Assembly: GCA_907165135.1 (NCBI GenBank)
Contig: OU015568.1
Location: 7,006,001-7,070,000, forward strand
DNA from: Oikopleura dioica
Taxonomy: Eukaryota > Animalia > Chordata
DNA length: 64,000 nt
Reading direction: 5' to 3'
Below are positions 29,940 through 46,661 of the stretch, piece after piece (positions within the stretch are counted from its first letter, which is position 1; every line of letters starts with the position of its first letter). A program made the position numbers and the translations under genes. The notes beneath the pieces were generated by a model. The model searched no databases. It saw only the letters and a program-made list of their open reading frames with translations, and had not been told where the DNA came from.

Positions 29940-31182
29940 ATGAAAATGGGGATTTTGAGTGAATTAGACAAGGTCGCCGGCGATATTCTCAAAGACACGA
30001 GAGACATTTTGATCTTTATCGGAAGACTGCTGCTGATTTCGACTTTTATCGAGGATGGCTTTAGAATGTGGCATCAGTGGACAGGTAAATTGAGAAAGAA
30101 AGGGTGGAGGTTTATTATTTTGTAGAGCACACGGAATACATTGGAAACACGTGGGACTGGCAGACGGAAATAGCTACAGTCGTTGTGGGGATCAATCTCG
30201 CCGGGCAAGTTTTAGGAGCGATCCTGGTGCTCTTCCGAATTTTAGTCACTCCTTCAGTTGTGCTACTCACGCTCATCGTCATCATCCAGGTTTGATTTCC
30301 CTTTCTTTATTCTTTTTTCGACTTTTTCCAAGACGATTGTTTATTCGATCATTTTCGACATCAAATTCCTGATGCGCCACCTCGCCATGATCGGCGCTCT
30401 CCTCCTCCTCCTCGCCGAGCACAAAGACCGTCGCGCTCAACAACAGAAGCAAAAGACGCCCGTTGGCCTTCCGGTCCTCGATGAGCACAGTCCGTCCAGT
30501 GGGCTTCAATTCTTTGGCAGAATTTTTCTTGTTCTGTTGTTTTGCACGCTCCTGCATTTCTGGGGCTGGTCTCAGGCGGCTGAAAACTTCAAGAATGACG
30601 AAGATGCTTTTGAAGATTTAATAGGGAAGGGTCTTGACTACTGAACTCGGCAAAAACCTGAGTCAGGGTCTGAAAGATCATTTTGGAAACGAAGAATTTG
30701 AAAATAAATTGAAATGTTAACTTTGCGAAGCCGCTTTGCGGCTTCGTTTTAAAGCAGCCGCTATGCGGCTTTTTGCTAAAGATCTTTCAGGCCCTGACTC
30801 AGGTTTTCAAGGCAGGTTGCCGAGCCTAATTTCGAATATATTATGCAGACCCGAATTAAAGGAATCAAGAAAGAAGTCCTCAACGACACCTTCGGGCTTT
30901 TCTTCATCCTGCTAATCGTCGCTGGATGGAAAACTAGACTATGTTCATTAATTCTGATCATTTGGCTTGGCTGCCTCAACTTCTTCGTCAACGACTTCTG
31001 GAGTCATGCAGACACGTCGATGATGTACGACTTCAAGCGCTACGATTTCTTCCAGGTAAGAAGAACCACTGCAACTCACTGTAACACTGTTTTAGACATT
31101 GAGTGTCATTGGAGGGCTGAAAATTTTAATCGCGCTTGGACCTGGCCACTTCTCGCTGGACTATGAGAAGAAAGGAATTTAA
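29940..31182 (+). CDS. SURF4: Surfeit locus protein 4-like ER cargo receptor
   Basis: IGRLLLISTFIEDGFRMWHQW, FLMRHLAMIGALLLLLAE, GRIFLVLLFCTLLHF, GWKTRL, YDFKRYDFFQ|TLSVIGGL...GPGHFSLDYEKKGI. Confidence 0.88.
30641..30828. mobile_element. MITE family A, copy 4 (in a SURF4 intron)
   Basis: CTCGGCAAAAACCTGAGTCAGGG...CCCTGACTCAGGTTTTCAAGGCAGGTTGCCGAG; internal AAGCCGCTTTGCGGCTT. Confidence 0.8.
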
Positions 31183-33851: not shown

Positions 33852-35394
33852 ATGCGGACTGTTATCTTGAGCAAGACGCTCTTGCGCATTGCGTTTGTCG
33901 TCATTCTTGTTCTAGTTTTGTACAGCTCCCGGAAGGCAAGAGACGTAGCCAGCGAAACCCTGAAAGAAGTGAGCGATGAATTGGCTCTGCTGCAAGAGGG
34001 TGAAGGTTAGCGAGATTTACTGATGAAAAAATAAGGATTAGCAGAGATAGTAGCTAAATCCTGGATTACTGTAGCAAGGAGATTTGATTGCATTGACAGT
34101 ATTTTTAGGTTCAGGCGAGGACAGGGTCGACATCTTGGAGAACATTGACAACTTCTACCACGAAGACTCCGAAGAGATCGAAGAAAAAGACCCGATCCAC
34201 TTCGCTGCTGAAGACAAAAAGTTCCTGCTTCACAACAAGCTCCCCAAATCCGGCTCGTCAACGATGAAATACATCCTCAAAGTCTTGTCGGACAAGAATG
34301 ACTTTTTCTTCGACCACTATCGGGTGAGCCAGTGCGACATTGACAACAACCAGCGACTTGTTCATCACGCAGCCAAGTTGCGAAGACAGCATCCGGACAA
34401 GAAGATTGTTCTGCTGAAGCACCACACTTGGGTGAATTTTACACACAGAGGTTATCCCCAGCCACAGGTCTGAATTCCTCGGAAATTCATTTTTGCAAAC
34501 CATTTTTCAAGTTTATCAACGTCGTTCGCCACCCAGTGACTCAATTCAAGAGCACTTATTACTTTTCACGCTTCGGATGGGGACTTCAAAAAGGAAAGAG
34601 AAAGTCGTTCAGGGCGGGATCTTCTTTTCAATAGATTTTTACAGAGAGATATTTCGGGGTAAGCGAATATAAGCAGATTAAAATCCTAATTGAAAGCGGC
34701 TCACACGAAGACCGAAAACGATCAATTGACGATTGCGTCGCCCAGGGCCAGTATGAGTGCGTCGATTCTATCGGCGTTTTCAACAAGTATTTCTGCGGCA
34801 CGGATCCTGTTTGCATGGATGTAAGTAATTACCGTTTCTCTAACTACCTGATCGATTAATGGAGTCTTAATCACGGGTTAGCAGATTGCTCAATTATTAA
34901 AATTTTTAATCAAGCACCGTACTCATCAACAACAACCCGACGGCAAGTGGGTTCGATTCACCGACCATGAAAAACTGAAGAAAGCAACGGAGCTCAGCAA
35001 GCAAAACATCCTCAAATACAGGCAAATCGGTGTGTTGGAAGAATTTGACTCGACTCTCAAGCTGTTGGAAGTGACTCTGCCCGAGTTTTACAAAGGAGCT
35101 TTGGATGCTTACCATGGACCCTGTAAATATAGTTTCAGTTTGAACTTCCCATTCATAAAAAATTCAGACGTCCAGAAGTTCGTCAAGCTGACCAAATCCA
35201 AGTCGCATGGAAATATGACAGAAGAAACTGCCAAAAAGCTGGAAGAGGTAACAAGCTACTAAAATGCCGCCTTCCCTAATTAGCGATTTTAGATGCTCTC
35301 ATACGACATGGACATCTACAACCTCGCGAAGCAGGTCTTCCACCAGCGCCTCCAAGAAAACGGCATCGGCAACAACGCCGTTGCCCCACTCTAA
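33852..35394 (+). CDS. Heparan sulfate 2-O / uronyl 2-sulfotransferase-like (type II membrane)
   Basis: N-terminal TM (RIAFVVILVLVLYSS); 5'-PSB motif HNKLPKSGSSTM; FINVVRHPVTQFKSTYYFSRFG; GVLEEFDSTLKLLE; YDMDIYNLAKQVF. Confidence 0.85.
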
Positions 35395-35541: not shown

Positions 35542-36720
35542 TTATTTCATTCGGCATTTTCCATTTTTACAGGCTTGGCAAAGTTCGGGGCGATGTCGGT
35601 TTCTAGGATTGCCGGATCGGCGGTCCACGCGTAGTTGGGGAATCAGGTCGATGTCTCCGTAGAAATGGTGGCGGATGCGAACGTAAAGGTTGTGCAGCAC
35701 CTAATAACTCTTTTTGCTGAAAAAAAAAATGAGAGCGGACCTTTGTGACTTCCTCAGGGTACCACATCGCCGTCTCAAATCGGTCTTCCATGCATTTCTG
35801 GCATTTTTGCCCGAACATTGTTGCTACAATAACTCCAACTCTCACATATTGCCCCTGAAAATCATCTTCAACAATTGACAAAGAAAAAGGATTACATTAA
35901 CAATTGAAGTATGAATCGTAATGTTGAAGGTGATCATTCCTCTCATCGAGGTCCAGCCATTTCCGCAAACTGGGCAGCAGAAGCGCACTTTTGCCCAGTC
36001 CCTTAAAACCATCCCGTAGGAATCGTCCTTTGGAGTCGATGATTCGTAGAAGTTCCATTTAGCGATGGGCGAATCTGGCAACTGACAGAAAAACTGATTG
36101 AATTCGCGTTGCCAGACGATTCTGATGAGATCGTCGTAGCTTTCTCCGTTTATCGTTGTTGTTACTTCGTAGCTCTTCTGGTTTAAATTTGAATCAATCT
36201 GGACTGGCATATAGAGATAATTCTACAAGAAGGTAAGGCTTGAAGATTCAATGGAGAACGACCTGGTTATAAAAGGGATGACTCGCTTGGTAATCAGTGA
36301 GAGTCGATGAGTTGAAAGAAATCGGTTGAGTCTGACTCTGTGACTGAGTGGTGAGTTGAGAGCCTGTTCCGTAAGCGGAGCCACTCGCTTCAGCTGGTTT
36401 TTAAAAGTCTGGTTTATCTTTCTCTTTTTGTTTTCCGAACAGGTGATTTTCCCTGGCGGTGCTTTCTCTACGTACCGTACGGTTGCTGAGCTTGGAGTTG
36501 TTGCTGCTGTTGGAGTAGAAGCTGTTGCTGGAGGAGAAGTTGCTGTTGTTGTTGAACAGTAGCGAGATAATACTGAAAACGTACAGTAAAAAAATCGTCT
36601 GTTTCCTCTGTTAGAAACCTGAGGCATGAGAAATTGAGTGATATCTTTTTTCACAGTCTCTTTTGATGAAACCAGCAGGTCTACTGCGGATTTCGTTTGA
36701 GAGCTTTCATCCTCTGCCAT
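35542..36720 (-). CDS. 3CxxC-type zinc-finger protein (RTP/receptor-transporting-protein-like)
   Basis: WQREF, AKVRFCCPVCGNGWTS, MFGQKCQKC, ETAMWYPEEV, HRPELCQACKNGKC; linkage of the S/T-rich N-terminal ORF 36223-36720 is less certain. Confidence 0.8.
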
Positions 36721-37104
36721 TTCTTATTTTTTCTCTGTTTTCTCGCTTTTTGGCCTAAATAGGTTTTCGATGCTCCCAAGGAAGCAGCAGGAAACGACTA
36801 AAATAACATAGACGGATGAAAAAGGGGCTTTGGAGAGACGTGCAAAGTTTTTATGAATTTGAAAATTTAAAGAGAGATGTGATGATATTATGAAAAAATA
36901 AAATGCGACTCGACGTCGATTCTGTCGTTTAAGATACCGCGTGTTATACACATTAAATTGTAAAATAAAATGTCTACTGAAAACTTCACATTGCATTCTC
37001 GACTATAGTGCCCTGACACGGTTTACGATGTATGATTGAATAAATGATTTATTTCTACAAACATGGTATAAATCTGCGTACTGATATCATAATGGAACTG
37101 TTGG

Positions 37105-39229
37105 TTAAAAAGAATAATATAGCACATTGAAGTAAAATGGGTGGCTGGCGTGGCTGAACTCTGGAAACACTACTGAAGGCTTTTTCAGAAGCCAGTAATG
37201 GTGATGACTTTTCGAAGCAACTTCGGAGTGGAAATTCGGAAGACGATCTAAAAACATTTTTTTCGGAAGGAAATTTTTTGAAAGGCAAACCGGCATCTTT
37301 TTCTCAGGGAAGTGAACTCCGTGGACTTCCGTTTTGTCGCCGTTTTGAATTTGATGCAGCTCTTTTTTGTGCGTCGGTGTGATGAATTGCTCGACGATCA
37401 CCTAATTTATAATTTGATAGAGACTGAAAATTTTGGCTTTCATACAAATCCCTTGAGTTTCATAGGAACTTCGATGACTCGATTGTTGACTGCTTGATGA
37501 TCCCAGTCGAGAACGTGGACGTAGAGAGCCATGTAGTCCTTTGAGCGAACATATCGAAAATTACCAGTTGGAATCGCCCCGTCTGGAAGGAACGGTCGGG
37601 TGTGATAGATTCCTTCGCTGTTGACTGACATCCAGGAGCCGAGATCCTTCAAAAGATTGTAAATTGAAGCCTTTATTTTGCTCTTACTTTTAGTCGTTTT
37701 TCTTGAATGGCACTGATAGAGCCATTAGGAAGCGGACCAACATCGAGAAGCAGATTTCCTCCCTTGCTCACGATGTCGATCAACATTCTGACGATATCAA
37801 TACTGGCCATGGTTTCCTTCTCCCCTTCATTTCTGTTGTAGCCAAAGCTAAAGCCGATGCCGCGATTTGTTTCCCAAGGTTGCGTTGTATTCACAACATC
37901 TTCAAATGAAGATATAAATTTTGAACTATTTTTACTTCAAAAGTTACCCATGATTTTGTATTCTGGCGTCATGAAATCTCCGTTGAACCCATTTGGAATC
38001 TTCCATCTGTTATTGACGACGCCATGTCCAGGGCAGACTAAAACTCGGTCAAAATAAGAGTTGTTTGGAAAGAAAAACCTTTGGAATAAAAATGCGCGAA
38101 TACTTCGTAAAGTCGTTCATCTTTTTCGTAATCTGGGTAATTGATATCATTCCATAAAATACAGGGCTTGTAGCGTTCCATCAATTCGTACAAATGCGAC
38201 GTTGCGTAGTTTGAGTACTCTTGAGGATCTGATGGAAGGTTCATTAAGAAATTCAGAGCCGTAATTTCGATGAAAACTGACATCAACGAGGATAATCTAA
38301 ATTCGGAACCCAAGCTTGTGGTTTTCGCGGTCGATACCAGCAATTTTTGCAGTCGCCATCAAGAGAACCGGGAAACGACCAATCAAGTCCTCCTGAGTAG
38401 TAAAGACCGTATTTCAGCCCGGATTTTTTCAGAGCTTTTCCAAGCTCTCCGACAAGATCTCGGTCGAGCCTTGTGTGCGCTGGAGTTCTGTACGGATTGG
38501 GGACGTTCGAAGGCCATAAAGTGAATCCATCGTGATGCTTGAAATAGATTAATTTTCAAAATTAAACCGGTCATGATTACTTTTGTGGTGAGAACGGCGT
38601 ATTTGGCTCCTGCATTTTTGAAGAGAGTCGCCATGTCCTTCGGCTCCCAGTCGCTAATCGCCTTATTGAATCGCGGCACAAAAGCATCCATGTAGCTTTC
38701 TTTGCCGTAGTGCTTCTTGTGGAACTCTCGCGATGGAGAGCCCTTGATTCGATAAGTATTCATGTACCACTCCGCATAAGGGTGATGTTTGAACCAGGTG
38801 ACGTTGTCGACATTTTCCCGCTCGCTGAACATGAAATCGGTCGGTGCAAATCCAGGCACGGAATAGAGGCCCCAGTGGATAAAAATTCCAAGTTTGGAGT
38901 CTTTCCACCAGTTTGGAGCTTCATGCGTTGACAGACTTGATAAAGTTGGCTCGTAGGTCTTTTCCGCGGTTAATTTTATGAGACGAAATTTCGTTTTCAA
39001 GAAAATATTGACACTTGATAAAATTGTTTTTTGCGATATTTTCTTAAAAAACAATGAAAGTTAGCCGTTCCTTGTGGGTATACAAATGAGCAAAGGCATT
39101 GTGGTTAAAATTGTAGCCCTAAAAATTCTCCTTGAAAACTTTCACTTCAAAATATTTTACCTGAAATAGCAAATAGCACAGCGCGAAAGCTGCTATCGAA
39201 ATGAATATCTCTATGCGACAGAGCCACAT
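37105..39229 (-). CDS. Alpha-L-fucosidase GH29, bacterial-type motifs, with N-terminal hydrophobic segment and introns (3' end approximate)
   Basis: KLGIFIHWGLYSVPG, PYAEWY.NTYRIKGSP, TTK|HHDGF, RDLVGEL, YYSGGLDW, LWNDINYP, VNNRW, FMTPEY, RGIGFSFGYNRNEG, VSKGGNLLLDVGP. Confidence 0.92.
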
Positions 39230-39592
39230 TCTGTGACTTGCTGTCTTCTTCTTCTTTTTGTACTGTAAATCAAAATATAGTGCTTTTTTTGGTGCCCAGC
39301 CCCGTCCGGTCCATGAAAATGCCACGGGCGCGGTCATCCCGCACGTTCCAAAGCTGATGTTTGTTGCGGCTTACAACACGAAAAATTGCAAATTTGATAA
39401 AACTGCCTGCCTGCCCCGAATTTTTCCACAAACACGGAGTCCTGACCGAAGGGTCATCATTTTTATTCTGGGAGATGTAGATTTTTGCAATAAAAAGAGA
39501 TGAGAGGCCTTCAATTTCGCCTACTGTAAGCGAATTGAGTTGATAGTTTTTTTTTCGAATGAGTTTTTATTTGAAGTCTTCAAACGCAAGAA

Positions 39593-43777: not shown

Positions 43778-46661
43778 TCAATAGTTGGTAGAACGAGTTC
43801 TTCGACCCCGTCCACGGCCAATTGAAATGCGTGATGAGGTTTGCAGGTCTGGAAATGGAATGGGCTTTTGGATACTTTTAGAGGAGGACACCTTGTTTTC
43901 CTCGATTCGGATCAGTCTTTCTGTGTCTTCTAGTCGCAGTCTTGCTTTTTTCGGAGTTGAAAACCGGTCTTTTAGTTAAAGAATTATTCTTTAGTTATAA
44001 AAGGTTATAAAGGGTTATAACTCGTTCCTCGGCCACCGCCAGATGGATGCCTTATTATCCAGTTACTCGATGAGGATGATGATGTAGACAGACCCCTTGG
44101 TCGATATGATTTTCTTTCTATGCCCTTTTCGCTTTCTCTATTTTGGAATTCTGAATTTCTTTGATTGGAATTGTAGTCGCCATTTGGACCCAGCTGTTCG
44201 TCGGTAGGATCTTCGTATCGCTCGCTGAAATTCGACTGCAAATTGGTGACAGAGGATTCAAGTCGAGAATAAGACTGGTGATCAGTGCCGTCGGATTCAC
44301 GCTTTATTTTGGAGGTATTCTTTCTGCTTGGTATCATACTATGTTGAGTGCCATTGTAGATCTCGTCCGACGAAAAGCTCGTATTGAACTTTGAACTGCC
44401 GTAATCTGGAATCTGGTCGAATCCAGCTCGATTTCGATCTTCATAAGCAAAGTGTTCGTTTTCATTCTCGTAGTTTTCTTCTTCCTCGTAGTACTTTTCC
44501 GCTTGAGTCTCTGGCTGATAGTACTGGCTTTCACTTTCTTCGTAATTCGGATTTTCATGGTCATAATTTTGATAATGCTCATTCTCGTAATATTCTCCTT
44601 CATTCTCTTCCTGATGATGATTCGATTGAAAGTCGTGATTTCCATTAGTGTACTGACTCTCCTCTTGTCCTCCGTAATTTTCAGCATCATCATATTCTTG
44701 ATAGCGCTCCTCTCCATTCTCATAATACTCTCCTTGCTGTTGTTGATGATGATTAACATGATGATTCCCTGATTGAAAATCATCAACCTCAACTTCTTCA
44801 TAATTTCCATCATAATCGTAATCATAATGCTGATGATTGCTTTCGCTATTTTCATAATACTGAGTACTACTCTCATCATATTCATTTGCGTTGTACGCCG
44901 CAGCATGCTCATTCTGATTCCTCCAGTTTGCTTTCTGATCGTTTACAGATTCTCCAGCTAAGTTCTGAACTAGCGGAGATGGTTGCCTATTGGTAGGCGT
45001 CGCTCCTCGTAGCTGAACATCCGGTAGAGCTTGAATTCTTTGCTGATGCCGACTGGGCACTCCCGTGTTCAGCATGTCAGTCTGGCGCTGCTGTTGCCTC
45101 CTCTCGTAGTTGATTGCCTGCTGTGTTGGCTCATGCTTGAATGTCGTAAATTGACAGCGCGCCTTGCTCAGTTTCGACTCTGGTTCGTGATTGCTCAGGT
45201 CTTCGATTCCGTCCAAATATCCAAGATGCTTCAGATGATCCGTCAGTAAATACGCAGTCCGGTAACAGTCCATTTGGCTGCAGTAATCGCAGTCGATGTC
45301 GTGATGAAAATCGCAGCGAATTTGGTTTCGCGAGAAAAGAGGTTTGTCGAACATTTCTCGGATTTTTTCGCGAGTCGGTATTTCATGCGGATTTCCGGGG
45401 TTCTCTTCATTTCTTCGCCGGTAAAGATTCTTGATGATCTCGAAGAAGTCGATCGGCATGGGAAGCCGCGTTGTGAAATACTTTTCGTTTTCGGGCGAGT
45501 TTTGGGAGAGATCGGTGTAAACCGATTCTGAAACAAGTAAATTATTCGATCAATAAGAAAACAAGCTGTGTTTACCGTGCGTCTGAAGCCACTGAGTACA
45601 ATACTCCGATCTTCCTTTTTGCTCCTCGACGCAGAACGTATTCATCAAAAGATTCTCCTGGTCATCTTGGAGGTACAAAATATCGTCGTCAGATTTAATC
45701 TGACTCTCGTGGAGAAAATCGACGAGTTTGCACCAAATTCCGCTGATGCCGTAATCGTTGATGAGTTTAGCCACTTCGTCCCCGTTGACTGGATTGAACG
45801 GGTCGATGTGATGCGTTTGAGTCGCGTGTTGCCGACATTCCGCCTGGAAAAGCAACGATAGAGGGCTAGAGCATTTTTTGTGTTACCATCATGCCGAGAG
45901 GTGGAGGACCAGGGTCGATTATTTCGTGATAGAAGTTGACTATTCCGTGCTGCAAGGAATAACTCATGATGCACATTTCCATTGGACGGAAACCCTGCTC
46001 GTCGGGATCGTCAAATTGACTCTGGAAGTGAATGAAGAGCAATTCACTGCCTTCGTAGAGAAACGAATCCACATACTCGCTCGTCACCTGACTCGATATT
46101 GCGTCGTTTTTCTTCGTTTCTTCGTCGTAGTCGACGTGGTTCACGACTGAAAAAAATGGTAAGGGCCTCCATCATTTTCTTCATCACCTGGAAGTCCGAA
46201 ACAATTGAGTTTTTCGTGGTCAGGACGGGCGTTTCTTCCGTGCGTCGCGATCTTCCACTCCTCTGCTCTGTCCTCGTACGGCTTCTTTTCAGCTTTGCTT
46301 TTTTCGCGTTACGAACCATAAGTAAAAATTGGCTTTTAATTAACTCTATTTATTTTTCAAAGAAATTATCAGTGATGATGATTGGTCTAGCAAATGCACT
46401 TAGCCTTTAATATGAGGAAATCTTACCGCCCCAGTCTGAGCTACTGTAATTAAAACTACCAACAATATGTCCCTAACTTGGGACGATTTGAATACAAATC
46501 TCAAGAAAGAACACGAGCCTGAGCGCCTTCCAATCAGCTAGTAAATATGGAACTGCCTCTTGTTTGTGATTGATTCGAATGCCCTGTTCTCTCAGTTGAG
46601 GTATGAAGTCGTCCATGTAGAAGTTGAACCCATTTTTGAGATTTTTCTTTACAGGCGGCAT
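43778..46661 (-). CDS. MAEL: Maelstrom (HMG box, MAEL domain, long low-complexity tail)
   Basis: HMG-like KNGFNFYMDDFIPQLREQG..W; PMEMCIMSYSLQHGIVNFYHEIIDPG; ATQTHHI; CDFHHDIDCDYCSQMDCYRTAY (EHHC zinc ligands). Confidence 0.9.

What the first reader, a model, noticed from the sequence alone, without database searches (positions are those of the whole stretch)
37105..39229. Bacterial-type GH29 alpha-L-fucosidase with spliceosomal introns: horizontal-transfer candidate
Seen: PYAEWYxNxxRIKGSP, TTKHHDGF, YYSGGLDW, LWNDINYP, VNNRW, FMTPEY and RGIGFSFGYNRNEG. Known, from memory: Thermotoga maritima fucosidase has PYAEWYENSLRIKESP, TTKHHDGF, YYSGGLDW, LWNDMGWP, VNDRW, FKTAEY and RGIGLSFGYNRNEG. Animal FUCA1/2 instead have TSKHHEGF, EWF, WSDG and SWGYRR. 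The nucleophile Asp and acid/base Glu positions are intact. The gene has at least six short introns, an added N-terminal hydrophobic exon and eukaryotic neighbours, so contamination is unlikely. Inferred: a domesticated bacterial gene, perhaps for digesting algal fucans or remodelling the house; tunicate cellulose synthase is a precedent.
Basis: partly seen in the sequence, partly recalled or inferred. Interest (0 to 1): 0.75.

Follow-up and report, generated by a model that had tools for sequence, protein, structure and literature searches.

The report
Bacterial-type fucosidase gene in Oikopleura
The only family-29 fucosidase gene of this Oikopleura dioica genome is a real, intron-rich animal gene. 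Its protein resembles bacterial enzymes rather than the usual animal FUCA1/2. Its nearest kin are a few other eukaryotes (calcareous sponges, Euglena, marine algae), so a foreign origin is likely but a direct jump from a bacterium is not shown.

Summary
A minus-strand gene (39229-37185) encodes a GH29 alpha-L-fucosidase with the quoted motifs, both catalytic residues, an N-terminal hydrophobic exon and metazoan neighbours.

- There are 10 exons and 9 introns, seven of them 41-48 nt GT-AG, one GA-AG, one non-canonical.
- The stop codon is at 37187-37185, not 37105.

The gene is already annotated (O. dioica OKI2018_I69 g10362, CAG5083375.1). It is single-copy and the only GH29 locus found in the genome. 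An orthologue with the same odd introns sits in the Bergen assembly. Spliced transcripts of close relatives occur in marine transcript assemblies.

The protein scores 286 bits against Thermotoga TmFuc and 153 against human FUCA1.

The trees change the interpretation. The appendicularian sequences fall in a strongly supported eukaryote-only clade (bootstrap 100, SH-aLRT 99, plus shared indels) with Sycon and a sponge-like contig, Euglena and three alga-like transcripts. That clade sits among bacterial, Acidobacteriota-type enzymes.

So the gene is bacterial-type and not FUCA1/2, but a direct bacterium-to-larvacean transfer is unlikely. Transfer between eukaryotes, or ancient patchy inheritance, remains open: sponge plus appendicularian monophyly was not rejected (AU p = 0.51). 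Canonical animal FUCA could not be put in the tree.

The parts
39161..39229 (-). Exon 1: ATG plus 23 codons, a hydrophobic signal peptide or signal anchor (MWLCRIEIFISIAAFALCYLLFQ)
   Evidence: Sequence. 78% identical to residues 1-23 of P0158. Exact substring of the annotated protein P0289. Predicted as an N-terminal helix, residues 3-33, in the AF2 model of P0158.
39119..39160 (-). Intron 1, 42 nt, GT-AG
   Evidence: Gap in the alignment of transcript L084. Ends printed. Equivalent 44-nt intron in the Bergen genome L092.
39071..39118 (-).
   Evidence: blastn of L084 137-186 onto 39120-39071. 87.5% identical to P0158 residues 24-39. Present in P0289.
38959..39070 (-). Intron 2, 112 nt, non-canonical GA-AG
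   Evidence: The same GA...AG intron occurs in the Bergen orthologue L092.
38581..38958 (-). Exon 2, 126 codons: start of the mature catalytic domain (IHWG, PYAEWY, LTTK)
   Evidence: PF01120 2.9e-27. TmFuc 5.6e-28. 85% identical to P0158.
38538..38580 (-). Intron 3, 43 nt, GT-AG
38315..38537 (-). Exon 3 (HHDGF ... YYSGGLDWSFP plus the 18-aa Cys loop GSLDGDCKNCWYRPRKPQ). The 3' boundary is ambiguous by up to 2 nt.
   Evidence: blastn of L084 runs to 38315. The loop is kept in transcripts of three relatives, P0158, P0159 and P0283. TmFuc has 15 residues at this place. The public model P0289 ends this exon at 38369.
38229..38314 (-). Intron 4, 86 nt, non-canonical (reads CT..AG; shifted by 1-2 nt it reads GC..CA or AG..TC). 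The public annotation instead uses a 140-nt GT-AG intron, 38368-38229.
   Evidence: The Bergen orthologue has the equivalent 75-nt intron reading CC..AG, and it is spliced in transcript L084. Not verified with RNA from this lineage.
38079..38228 (-). Exon 4, with the nucleophile Asp in LWNDINYP
   Evidence: Aligns with TmFuc 197-245, Asp on D224. 94% identical to P0158.
38038..38078 (-). Intron 5, 41 nt, GT-AG
37948..38037 (-). Exon 5 (VCPGHGVVNNRW ... GDFMTPEY), with the acid/base Glu and the clade-specific extra Cys
   Evidence: Glu aligns with TmFuc E266. The clade signature is visible in alignment A3.
37900..37947 (-). Intron 6, 48 nt, GT-AG
37688..37899 (-). Exon 6 (RGIGFSFGYNRNEG ... GGNLLLDVGP)
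   Evidence: PF01120 6.3e-19. TmFuc 2.9e-17 against human FUCA1 9.5e-6.
37647..37687 (-). Intron 7, 41 nt, GT-AG
37446..37646 (-). Exon 7: end of the barrel and start of the C-terminal beta-sandwich
   Evidence: 87% identical to P0158 residues 391-457. Beta strands in the model.
37402..37445 (-). Intron 8, 44 nt, GT-AG
37291..37401 (-). Exon 8 (37 codons).
   Evidence: 97% identical to P0158 residues 458-494. Present in P0289.
37248..37290 (-).
37185..37247 (-). Exon 9: last 20 codons (IVFRISTPKLLRKVITITGF) and stop TGA at 37187-37185
   Evidence: 95% identical to P0158 residues 495-514. Present in P0289.
37094..37184 (-). 3' untranslated region
   Evidence: blastn of the relative's transcript L084 1554-1695 onto 37244-37094.

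Best explanation
What it is. A functional, single-copy O. dioica gene encodes a retaining exo-alpha-L-fucosidase of CAZy family GH29. It belongs to the Thermotoga TmFuc-like ('bacterial-type') branch.

How it works.
- An N-terminal hydrophobic exon takes the protein into the secretory or endolysosomal pathway.
- A (beta/alpha)8 barrel binds terminal alpha-L-fucose. The Asp of LWND acts as nucleophile and the Glu of TPEY as acid/base. A C-terminal beta-sandwich follows.
- No other GH29 locus is detectable, so this enzyme probably does the fucosidase work that FUCA1/2 does in other animals. A digestive role is also possible. This step is inferred.

Where it came from.
- It is not an orthologue of animal FUCA1/2.
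- It belongs to a small eukaryote-only clade (appendicularians, calcareous sponges, euglenids, some marine algae) that branches among bacterial, Acidobacteriota-like enzymes.
- The likeliest history is one old bacterium-to-eukaryote acquisition. Patchy spread or patchy retention among eukaryotes followed.
- The gene was in the appendicularian lineage before the O. dioica cryptic species and several more distant relatives diverged. It then gained about nine introns.
- A direct bacterium-to-larvacean transfer is unlikely.
For: Shown here:
- GH29 family membership and both catalytic residues.
- Fold: the AF2 model of the 87%-identical orthologue P0158 has pLDDT 90. Its best Foldseek matches are TmFuc chains (TM 0.85-0.88); human FUCA1 ranks 13th.
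- Gene structure: ten exons map collinearly onto residues 1-514 of a transcript-derived orthologue and exactly onto the public protein CAG5083375.1, apart from one loop.
- Host gene: metazoan neighbours, and an orthologue in Bergen scaffold FN653052.1 with the same GA-AG and non-canonical introns.
- Single-copy, and the only PF01120 locus in the 64.3-Mb genome.
- Not FUCA-like: 286.5 bits to TmFuc against 152.8 to human FUCA1. The FUCA1/TmFuc score ratio is 0.53, the same as for a cyanobacterial homologue (0.51) and for Sycon (0.46). Human FUCA1 lacks the PYAEWY segment, the Cys insertion and the GDFxTPEY and SFGYNR motifs.
- Searches: the exhaustive representative search and the word searches found appendicularian-like sequences first. 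Next came Euglena, Sycon and MMETSP proteins together with hundreds of bacterial proteins. No canonical animal FUCA was listed.
- Trees (IQ-TREE, LG+C20 PMSF): appendicularians 100/100; eukaryote clade E 100/99; Acidobacteriota-type sister group 85/92.
- Three shared indel or motif characters mark clade E in alignment A3.
- The sponge-like member lies on a 79-kb contig beside a BEL/Pao-type retroelement.
Against: - Canonical animal FUCA1/2 sequences could not be placed in the tree, because no referable sequence was available. Non-orthology rests on score ratios, motifs and indels.
- The root is not inferred, and the nodes that nest clade E deeper among bacteria are weak (38-39 / 71-76).
- All eukaryotic branches are long (0.4-1.0), so some attraction between them cannot be excluded. 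The shared indels argue against it.
- The organisms behind several clade members (P0159, P0283, L086, P0108, P0385, P0013) are not identified.
- Sponge plus appendicularian monophyly is not rejected (AU p = 0.507), so vertical descent within animals with many losses stays possible.
- Expression in this lineage was not shown. Four RNA runs gave essentially no reads on the gene, and all reads laid were under 90% identical.
- No enzymology was done. The cellular location is inferred from a hydrophobic N-terminus only.
Confidence: 0.7

Rival explanations
1. One reading: a bacterium donated the gene directly to the appendicularian lineage, where it was domesticated by gaining introns and a signal exon.
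For: - About 50% identity to many bacterial GH29s (Calothrix, Chloroflexota, Acidobacteriota), with the mature N-terminus aligning exactly at 'TYEPT'.
- Hundreds of bacterial proteins score almost as high as the best non-appendicularian eukaryote.
- The gene was not found in other chordates in these searches.
Against: - Appendicularians are sister to, or inside, a eukaryote-only clade with 100/99 support.
- That clade shares derived indels absent from all 20 bacterial sequences aligned.
- No bacterial sequence with these signatures turned up among 5.8-15 billion proteins searched.
Confidence: 0.12
2. Eukaryote-to-eukaryote transfer: an ancestor of the appendicularians, a filter feeder on protists and algae, took the gene from a eukaryote that already had it. 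Calcareous sponges did the same independently.
For: - Clade E holds taxa far apart on the species tree: Euglena, an MMETSP protist, sponges and appendicularians.
- In the free tree, sponges group with the alga-like sequences (94/91) rather than with appendicularians.
- Both animal groups are microphagous filter feeders (established knowledge).
Against: - The order inside clade E is not resolved. Constraining the animals together costs nothing (AU p = 0.507).
- Donor lineages are not identified.
- Sampling of eukaryotes was limited by the tools.
Confidence: 0.33
3. An old eukaryotic or early-metazoan GH29 paralogue of bacterial ancestry, inherited vertically and lost in most lineages. Appendicularians kept it and lost the canonical FUCA.
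For: - The monophyletic eukaryote clade has its own signatures.
- Animal monophyly within it is not rejected.
- O. dioica is known for massive gene loss (established knowledge), and no canonical FUCA was found.
Against: - It needs very many independent losses.
- No other animal protein appeared among the best hits of three large searches.
- The sponge copy is intronless while the appendicularian copies carry many introns.
Confidence: 0.25
4. A fast-evolving but orthologous animal FUCA that only looks bacterial.
For: - O. dioica proteins evolve fast.
- Language-model features place the protein near animal fucosidase clusters (0.95) as well as bacterial ones (0.94). This is a lead only.
Against: - Divergence would not recreate bacterial motifs and indels such as PYAEWY, TKHHDGF, LWND, TPEY and SFGYNRNEG.
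- The FUCA1/TmFuc score ratio equals that of a bacterial homologue.
Confidence: 0.03
5. Bacterial contamination or an assembly artefact.
For: None found.
Against: - Nine spliceosomal introns of typical Oikopleura size.
- Metazoan flanking genes on a 17-Mb scaffold.
- The same gene, with the same introns, in an independent assembly.
- Spliced transcripts of relatives.

Confidence: 0.01

Closest known systems
Thermotoga maritima alpha-L-fucosidase TmFuc (PDB 1HL8/1ODU; GH29 subfamily A)
   Same: Best solved match by sequence (286.5 bits, residues 40-389 on 7-359) and by fold (TM 0.85-0.88). The nucleophile D224 and acid/base E266 positions are conserved, as are the IHWG, PYAEWY, KHHDGF, NxRW and SFGYNRNEG motifs.
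   Different: The Oikopleura protein has a eukaryotic signal or anchor exon plus stalk, an 18-residue Cys-containing loop, an extra Cys before P-x-G-x-[VI]-N-x-R-W and a divergent C-terminal domain that Pfam PF16757 does not recognise. Identity is about 36% over the structural alignment.
Acidobacteriota/Bryobacteraceae-type bacterial GH29 (for example the MAG proteins P0178, P0184; loci L007, L039)
   Same: Highest-scoring prokaryotic relatives (45-52% identity) and the sister group of the eukaryote clade in the 69-row tree (85/92).
   Different: They lack the clade-E insertions, carry a recognisable Fucosidase_C domain and have no introns.
Clade-E eukaryotic GH29s: Sycon ciliatum EP00117_P016967, Euglena gracilis EG_transcript_7102, MMETSP Transcript_105111
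   Same: Same strongly supported clade and the same signature indels. All have N-terminal membrane anchors or signal peptides.
   Different: Only 37-42% identical to the Oikopleura protein. They have long stalk regions. The sponge-like copy has no introns.
Human tissue alpha-L-fucosidase FUCA1 (PDB 7PLS) and animal FUCA2
   Same: Same family and fold, and probably the same reaction (TM 0.84).
   Different: Only 152.8 bits and 26% identity. It lacks the PYAEWY-containing segment and has WSDG and SWGYRR-type motifs instead. It is not the orthologue.
Tunicate cellulose synthase CesA and GH6-1, the accepted bacterial-origin genes of tunicates (PMC10334666)
   Same: A carbohydrate-active enzyme of bacterial type, fixed in a tunicate genome and carrying introns.
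   Different: CesA and GH6 are shared by tunicates generally. This GH29 was found only in appendicularian-type sequences among chordates. Its closest kin are other eukaryotes, so the route of acquisition is less clear.

Membership tests
CAZy GH29 alpha-L-fucosidase (Pfam PF01120) | Significant match to the family profile | tested here: met
   Exons 2, 3 and 6 each exceed the 25.2-bit cut-off (96.5, 45.5 and 69 bits). The genome scan scored 96.6, 74.5 and 42.9 bits.
CAZy GH29 alpha-L-fucosidase (Pfam PF01120) | Catalytic nucleophile Asp (TmFuc D224, W-N-D motif) | tested here: met
   LWNDINYP aligns with TmFuc LWNDMGWP, Asp on position 224. The column is invariant in A3.
CAZy GH29 alpha-L-fucosidase (Pfam PF01120) | General acid/base Glu (TmFuc E266) | tested here: met
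   DFMTPEY aligns with TmFuc DFKTAEY, Glu on position 266. The column is invariant in A3. The role of E266 comes from the literature, recalled from memory.
CAZy GH29 alpha-L-fucosidase (Pfam PF01120) | Fucose-binding His of HWG, His pair of KHHDG, E-W of AEWY, Arg of N-x-R-W | tested here: met
   All are aligned and conserved against TmFuc and are invariant or nearly invariant in A3.
CAZy GH29 alpha-L-fucosidase (Pfam PF01120) | (beta/alpha)8 barrel plus C-terminal beta-sandwich | tested here: met
   Tested on the 87%-identical orthologue P0158, not on the window's own product. AF2 pLDDT 90 and pTM 0.88. Foldseek TM 0.85-0.88 to TmFuc over about 480 columns.
CAZy GH29 alpha-L-fucosidase (Pfam PF01120) | Alpha-L-fucosidase activity | not testable with these tools
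   Needs a recombinant enzyme assay.
Animal FUCA1/FUCA2 orthologue group | Closer to animal FUCA than to bacterial GH29 | tested here: not met
   152.8 bits to human FUCA1 against 286.5 to TmFuc. The ratio is the same as for a cyanobacterial protein. No animal FUCA appears among the best hits.
Animal FUCA1/FUCA2 orthologue group | FUCA-type motifs and indels (short segment after SVPAWG, WSDG, SWGYRR) | tested here: not met
   The HMMER alignment of a clade-E member with 7PLS shows that FUCA1 lacks the PYAEWY segment and differs at these motifs. The window has the bacterial-type states.
Animal FUCA1/FUCA2 orthologue group | Groups with FUCA1/2 in a phylogeny | not tested
Direct bacterium-to-appendicularian horizontal transfer | Integrated in the host genome (introns, host neighbours, independent assemblies) | tested here: met
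Direct bacterium-to-appendicularian horizontal transfer | Nearest non-appendicularian relatives are bacteria | tested here: not met
   The nearest relatives are a eukaryote-only clade, 100/99, with shared indels.
Direct bacterium-to-appendicularian horizontal transfer | Absent from other animals | tested here: inconclusive
   Present in Sycon and in a sponge-like genomic contig. No other animal was seen, but the searches list only the best 120-150 hits.

The most novel reading that the evidence does not exclude
Appendicularians lost the canonical lysosomal FUCA and replaced it with a foreign, bacterial-type GH29 picked up from eukaryotic prey. Another group of filter feeders, the calcareous sponges, acquired a member of the same clade independently. 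This would be xenologous replacement of a housekeeping lysosomal hydrolase in a chordate, with food-borne eukaryote-to-eukaryote transfer as the route.
Probability: 0.3. Interest if true: 0.6.

Novelty: new member of a known kind. Interest (0 to 1): 0.45.

Why it matters
The enzyme itself is an ordinary GH29-A fucosidase, and the gene is already in public annotation (CAG5083375.1; UniProt E4XHQ2 for the Bergen strain). Its ancestry is what is unusual. A chordate's only detectable GH29 is not the animal FUCA. It belongs to a small, patchy eukaryotic clade of bacterial descent.

I found no paper that mentions this.

If confirmed, it would:
- add a carbohydrate-active enzyme to the short list of foreign-origin genes in tunicates;
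- give a clean case of replacement of a lysosomal enzyme gene;
- offer a test system for intron gain after transfer, with about nine introns including GA-AG and another non-canonical one conserved between cryptic species.

It also flags a probable error in both public gene models: an 18-residue loop is lost or altered because of a non-canonical intron.

Tried and rejected
- RNA evidence for this lineage. Four RNA runs of the same species label were laid on 36900-39500. There was no useful coverage, and all laid reads were under 90% identical. The pile at 39229-39260 is a spurious partial match of another transcript to an AAG-rich stretch. About one read lay in exon 2. Expression and splicing in this lineage therefore remain unshown. 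They are inferred from relatives' transcripts.
- My first exon model. It had GT-AG introns only, 8 exons and a stop at 37105. It was replaced after the transcript alignment. Its E3/E4 junction (92-nt GT-AG intron) and the long last exon were wrong.
- Pfam and NCBIfam on the C-terminal exons: no hit. The domain was confirmed by fold instead.
- Flanking repeats or insertion scars around the gene: nothing above chance.
- Microsynteny between the window and the relative's contig L086: only the fucosidase matches. A Sulfotransfer_2 gene lies near the fucosidase in both, but the two show no detectable similarity.
- Literature: no paper links Oikopleura with fucosidase. The amphioxus HGT paper and the enchytraeid paper have nothing relevant. 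The GH29 evolution paper does not treat this case.
- ESM Atlas feature search: nearest clusters are animal and bacterial fucosidases at equal scores. It is not informative for ancestry.
- Earlier scan findings by words: nothing.
- Joined model. The 514-aa spliced model of the window's gene was not sent to any search or fold tool. The public protein P0289 and the orthologue P0158 were used instead. In one search the exons were concatenated inside a script only to count length, GC content and stop codons. Nothing was printed or saved.
Full report
**1. What is in the sequence**

The region carries a minus-strand gene. The exon translations hit Pfam Alpha_L_fucos (PF01120) piece by piece.

Exon 2 alone matches Thermotoga maritima fucosidase (1HL8) at 5.6e-28. 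It matches human FUCA1 (7PLS) at only 3.6e-7, over 38 residues. Exon 6 gives 2.9e-17 against 9.5e-6.

The genome is 64.3 Mb in 19 contigs. The gene's product is the public protein CAG5083375.1, 'Oidioi.mRNA.OKI2018_I69.PAR.g10362.t1 [Oikopleura dioica]' (P0289). My exon translations are exact substrings of it, apart from one loop. The organism is therefore O. dioica of the Okinawa lineage.

**2. Gene model**

My first model, using GT-AG introns only, was partly wrong.

The exhaustive protein search with exon 2 found fragments 72-87% identical. One of them led to L084, a 1.7-kb intron-free contig from JGI sample 3300018976. L084 is a spliced mRNA of a close relative.

Aligning L084 to the window gives 10 exons and 9 introns. 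The exon-by-exon comparison with the 514-aa protein P0158 agrees. All ten exons map collinearly onto residues 1-514 at 75-97% identity.

The introns measure 42, 112, 43, 86, 41, 48, 41, 44 and 43 nt. Seven are GT-AG, one is GA-AG (39070-38959) and one is non-canonical (38314-38229).

The coding sequence is 1545 nt, or 514 codons plus the stop codon. The stop is at 37187-37185.

The public model P0289 (496 aa) differs only in removing 18 codons (GSLDGDCKNCWYRPRKPQ) with a canonical 140-nt intron. Three observations favour the 86-nt non-canonical intron instead:
- Transcripts of three relatives keep that Cys loop.
- TmFuc has 15 residues at that place.
- The Bergen genome has the equivalent non-canonical intron, which is spliced in L084.

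RNA runs laid on the window gave no usable coverage. This point is therefore inferred, not shown, for this lineage.

**3. It is a host gene**

- Neighbours are SURF4, Maelstrom, a carbohydrate sulfotransferase and a 3CxxC zinc-ribbon gene.
- GC content (0.46 in the coding sequence, 0.435 in the window) is unremarkable.
- The annotated gene lies on a 17-Mb scaffold.
- The Bergen assembly carries the orthologue (CBY19609.1, scaffold FN653052.1) with the same intron positions, including the GA-AG one.

Contamination is excluded.

The gene is single-copy. It is the only locus in the genome that matches the GH29 profile, so no canonical FUCA was detected.

**4. What the protein is**

The full annotated protein scores 286.5 bits against TmFuc. 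The Asp of LWND aligns with D224 and the Glu of TPEY with E266. The fucose-binding His, Glu/Trp and Arg positions are conserved.

An AlphaFold model of the orthologue P0158 (pLDDT 90) shows three parts: an N-terminal helix, a barrel and a C-terminal beta-sandwich. Its best Foldseek matches are all TmFuc chains (TM 0.85-0.88). Human FUCA1 ranks 13th at 26% identity.

The mechanism I commit to is a retaining exo-alpha-L-fucosidase that enters the secretory or endolysosomal route through the hydrophobic first exon. Its site of action (lysosome, gut lumen or house) is unknown.

**5. Ancestry**

*Hit lists.* After the appendicularian-type sequences (P0158 858 bits, P0159 586, P0160 535) there is a gap. 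Then come Euglena gracilis (301 bits) and hundreds of bacterial proteins at 298-266 bits, many labelled Acidobacteriota or Bryobacteraceae. A scan of bacterial and archaeal genomes gave about 50% identity for exon 2 in Cyanobacteriota, Chloroflexota, Acidobacteriota, Bacteroidota and an Asgard MAG.

*Other eukaryote members.* The exon-2 search also returned eukaryote-derived proteins:
- Sycon ciliatum (EukProt);
- an MMETSP transcript;
- two transcript-like Logan contigs;
- P0298, which lies intronless on a 79-kb contig beside a BEL/Pao-type retroelement and so comes from an animal genome.

*Trees.* I built a careful IQ-TREE (LG+C20+F+G4 PMSF, 69 rows, 476 columns). Results:

| Grouping | UFBoot / SH-aLRT |
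|---|---|
| Four appendicularian-type sequences | 100 / 100 |
| Clade E: these plus Euglena, two sponge-type and three alga-type sequences | 100 / 99 |
| Clade E plus a five-member Acidobacteriota-type group (sister) | 85 / 92 |

A 37-row tree adds L086, a further marine eukaryote contig with two or three exons. It falls as sister of the appendicularians (100/97), and clade E is again 100/99.

*Shared characters.* Alignment A3 shows characters shared by all ten clade-E sequences and by none of the 20 prokaryotic ones:
- a one-residue insertion carrying Cys (x-C-P-x-G) before VNxRW;
- G-D-F-x-T-P-E-Y;
- a longer loop after WNDIxxP.

These argue that the clade is not merely long-branch attraction.

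*Inside clade E.* The order is unresolved. Holding sponges and appendicularians together is not rejected (AU p = 0.507).

**6. Relation to animal FUCA1/2**

I could not place canonical animal sequences in the tree. Indirect tests all point the same way.

- The ratio of the score against human FUCA1 to the score against TmFuc is 0.53 for the Oikopleura protein, 0.51 for a Calothrix protein and 0.46 for Sycon. Clade E therefore has no special affinity to FUCA1.
- The printed alignment of a clade-E protein with FUCA1 shows that FUCA1 lacks the PYAEWY segment and the clade signatures. It also differs at the acid/base and SFGYNR regions.
- The published GH29 survey reports all metazoan homologues in one tight cluster and does not mention this case.

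**7. Verdict**

The gene is bacterial-type, not FUCA, truly integrated, and old enough to be shared by several divergent appendicularian-type lineages.

The immediate relatives are other eukaryotes, so a direct bacterial donor is unlikely (about 0.12). The choice lies between transfer between eukaryotes (about 0.33) and ancient patchy inheritance (about 0.25). The remainder is undecided within the general statement I give as the best explanation.

The gene is already annotated as alpha-L-fucosidase. Its odd ancestry and the apparent loss of canonical FUCA appear not to have been described.

Interest is moderate: a good, testable case of a foreign-type carbohydrate enzyme in a chordate, but not a new kind of system.

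**Limits and disclosure**

- The organisms behind P0159, P0283, L086, P0108, P0385 and P0013 are unknown. 'Appendicularian-type' rests on 64-87% identity to the O. dioica protein (P0158) and on the shared N- and C-terminal exons.
- The large searches list only their best 120-150 hits.
- The joined 514-aa model of the window was not submitted to any tool.

Noticed in passing
window 38229-38368 (minus strand): Both public gene models probably mis-splice here. The Okinawa model (CAG5083375.1, 496 aa) drops 18 codons of a conserved Cys loop by using a 140-nt GT-AG intron. The Bergen model (CBY19609.1) uses yet another junction. Relatives' transcripts imply an 86-nt non-canonical intron (CT..AG here, CC..AG in Bergen).
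   Followed up: partly
window 38959-39070 (minus strand); L092 3621-3752: A GA-AG intron is conserved between the Okinawa and Bergen lineages of O. dioica. The annotators accepted it.
   Followed up: partly
window 39229-39260: RNA reads from all four runs pile up only on an AAG-rich stretch just upstream of the ATG. They carry long unmatched ends on both sides and two small insertions. This is a partial match of some other transcript, not expression of this gene.
   Followed up: partly
window 34084-34470 (+) and L086 10716-11081 (-): A Sulfotransfer_2 gene lies a few kb downstream of the fucosidase, in convergent orientation, both in the window and on the relative's contig L086. No sequence similarity between the two was detected, so this may be coincidence.
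   Followed up: partly
L085 10001-11854 and 13878-16424: The sponge-like clade-E fucosidase is an intronless 617-codon ORF on a 79-kb ENA contig. It lies next to a BEL/Pao-type retroelement ORF (DUF1759, Integrase_H2C2, DUF5641).
   Followed up: no
L017, L037, L040 (Promethearchaeia archaeon ABR15): One Asgard-archaeon MAG carries at least three TmFuc-like GH29 genes on separate contigs. Two of them group together with bacterial sequences in the tree.
   Followed up: no
L084 about 400-555: The metatranscriptome contig has a one-base frameshift relative to the 514-aa cluster representative P0158. This splits the ORF into 161-aa and 367-aa calls. It is probably an assembly or sequencing error.
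   Followed up: no
L092 2001-5733 (Bergen scaffold FN653052.1): The 2010 Bergen gene model fuses an upstream KH / AKAP7-type 2H-phosphoesterase gene to the fucosidase, giving 935 aa. The relative's transcript L084 has stop codons upstream of the ATG, so the fusion is probably a prediction artefact.
   Followed up: partly
window 45869-46144 (-), 30843-31163 (+), 35845-36210 (-): Exons of a Maelstrom-domain gene, a SURF4 gene and a 3CxxC zinc-ribbon gene flank the locus. They were used only as evidence of a metazoan context.
   Followed up: no
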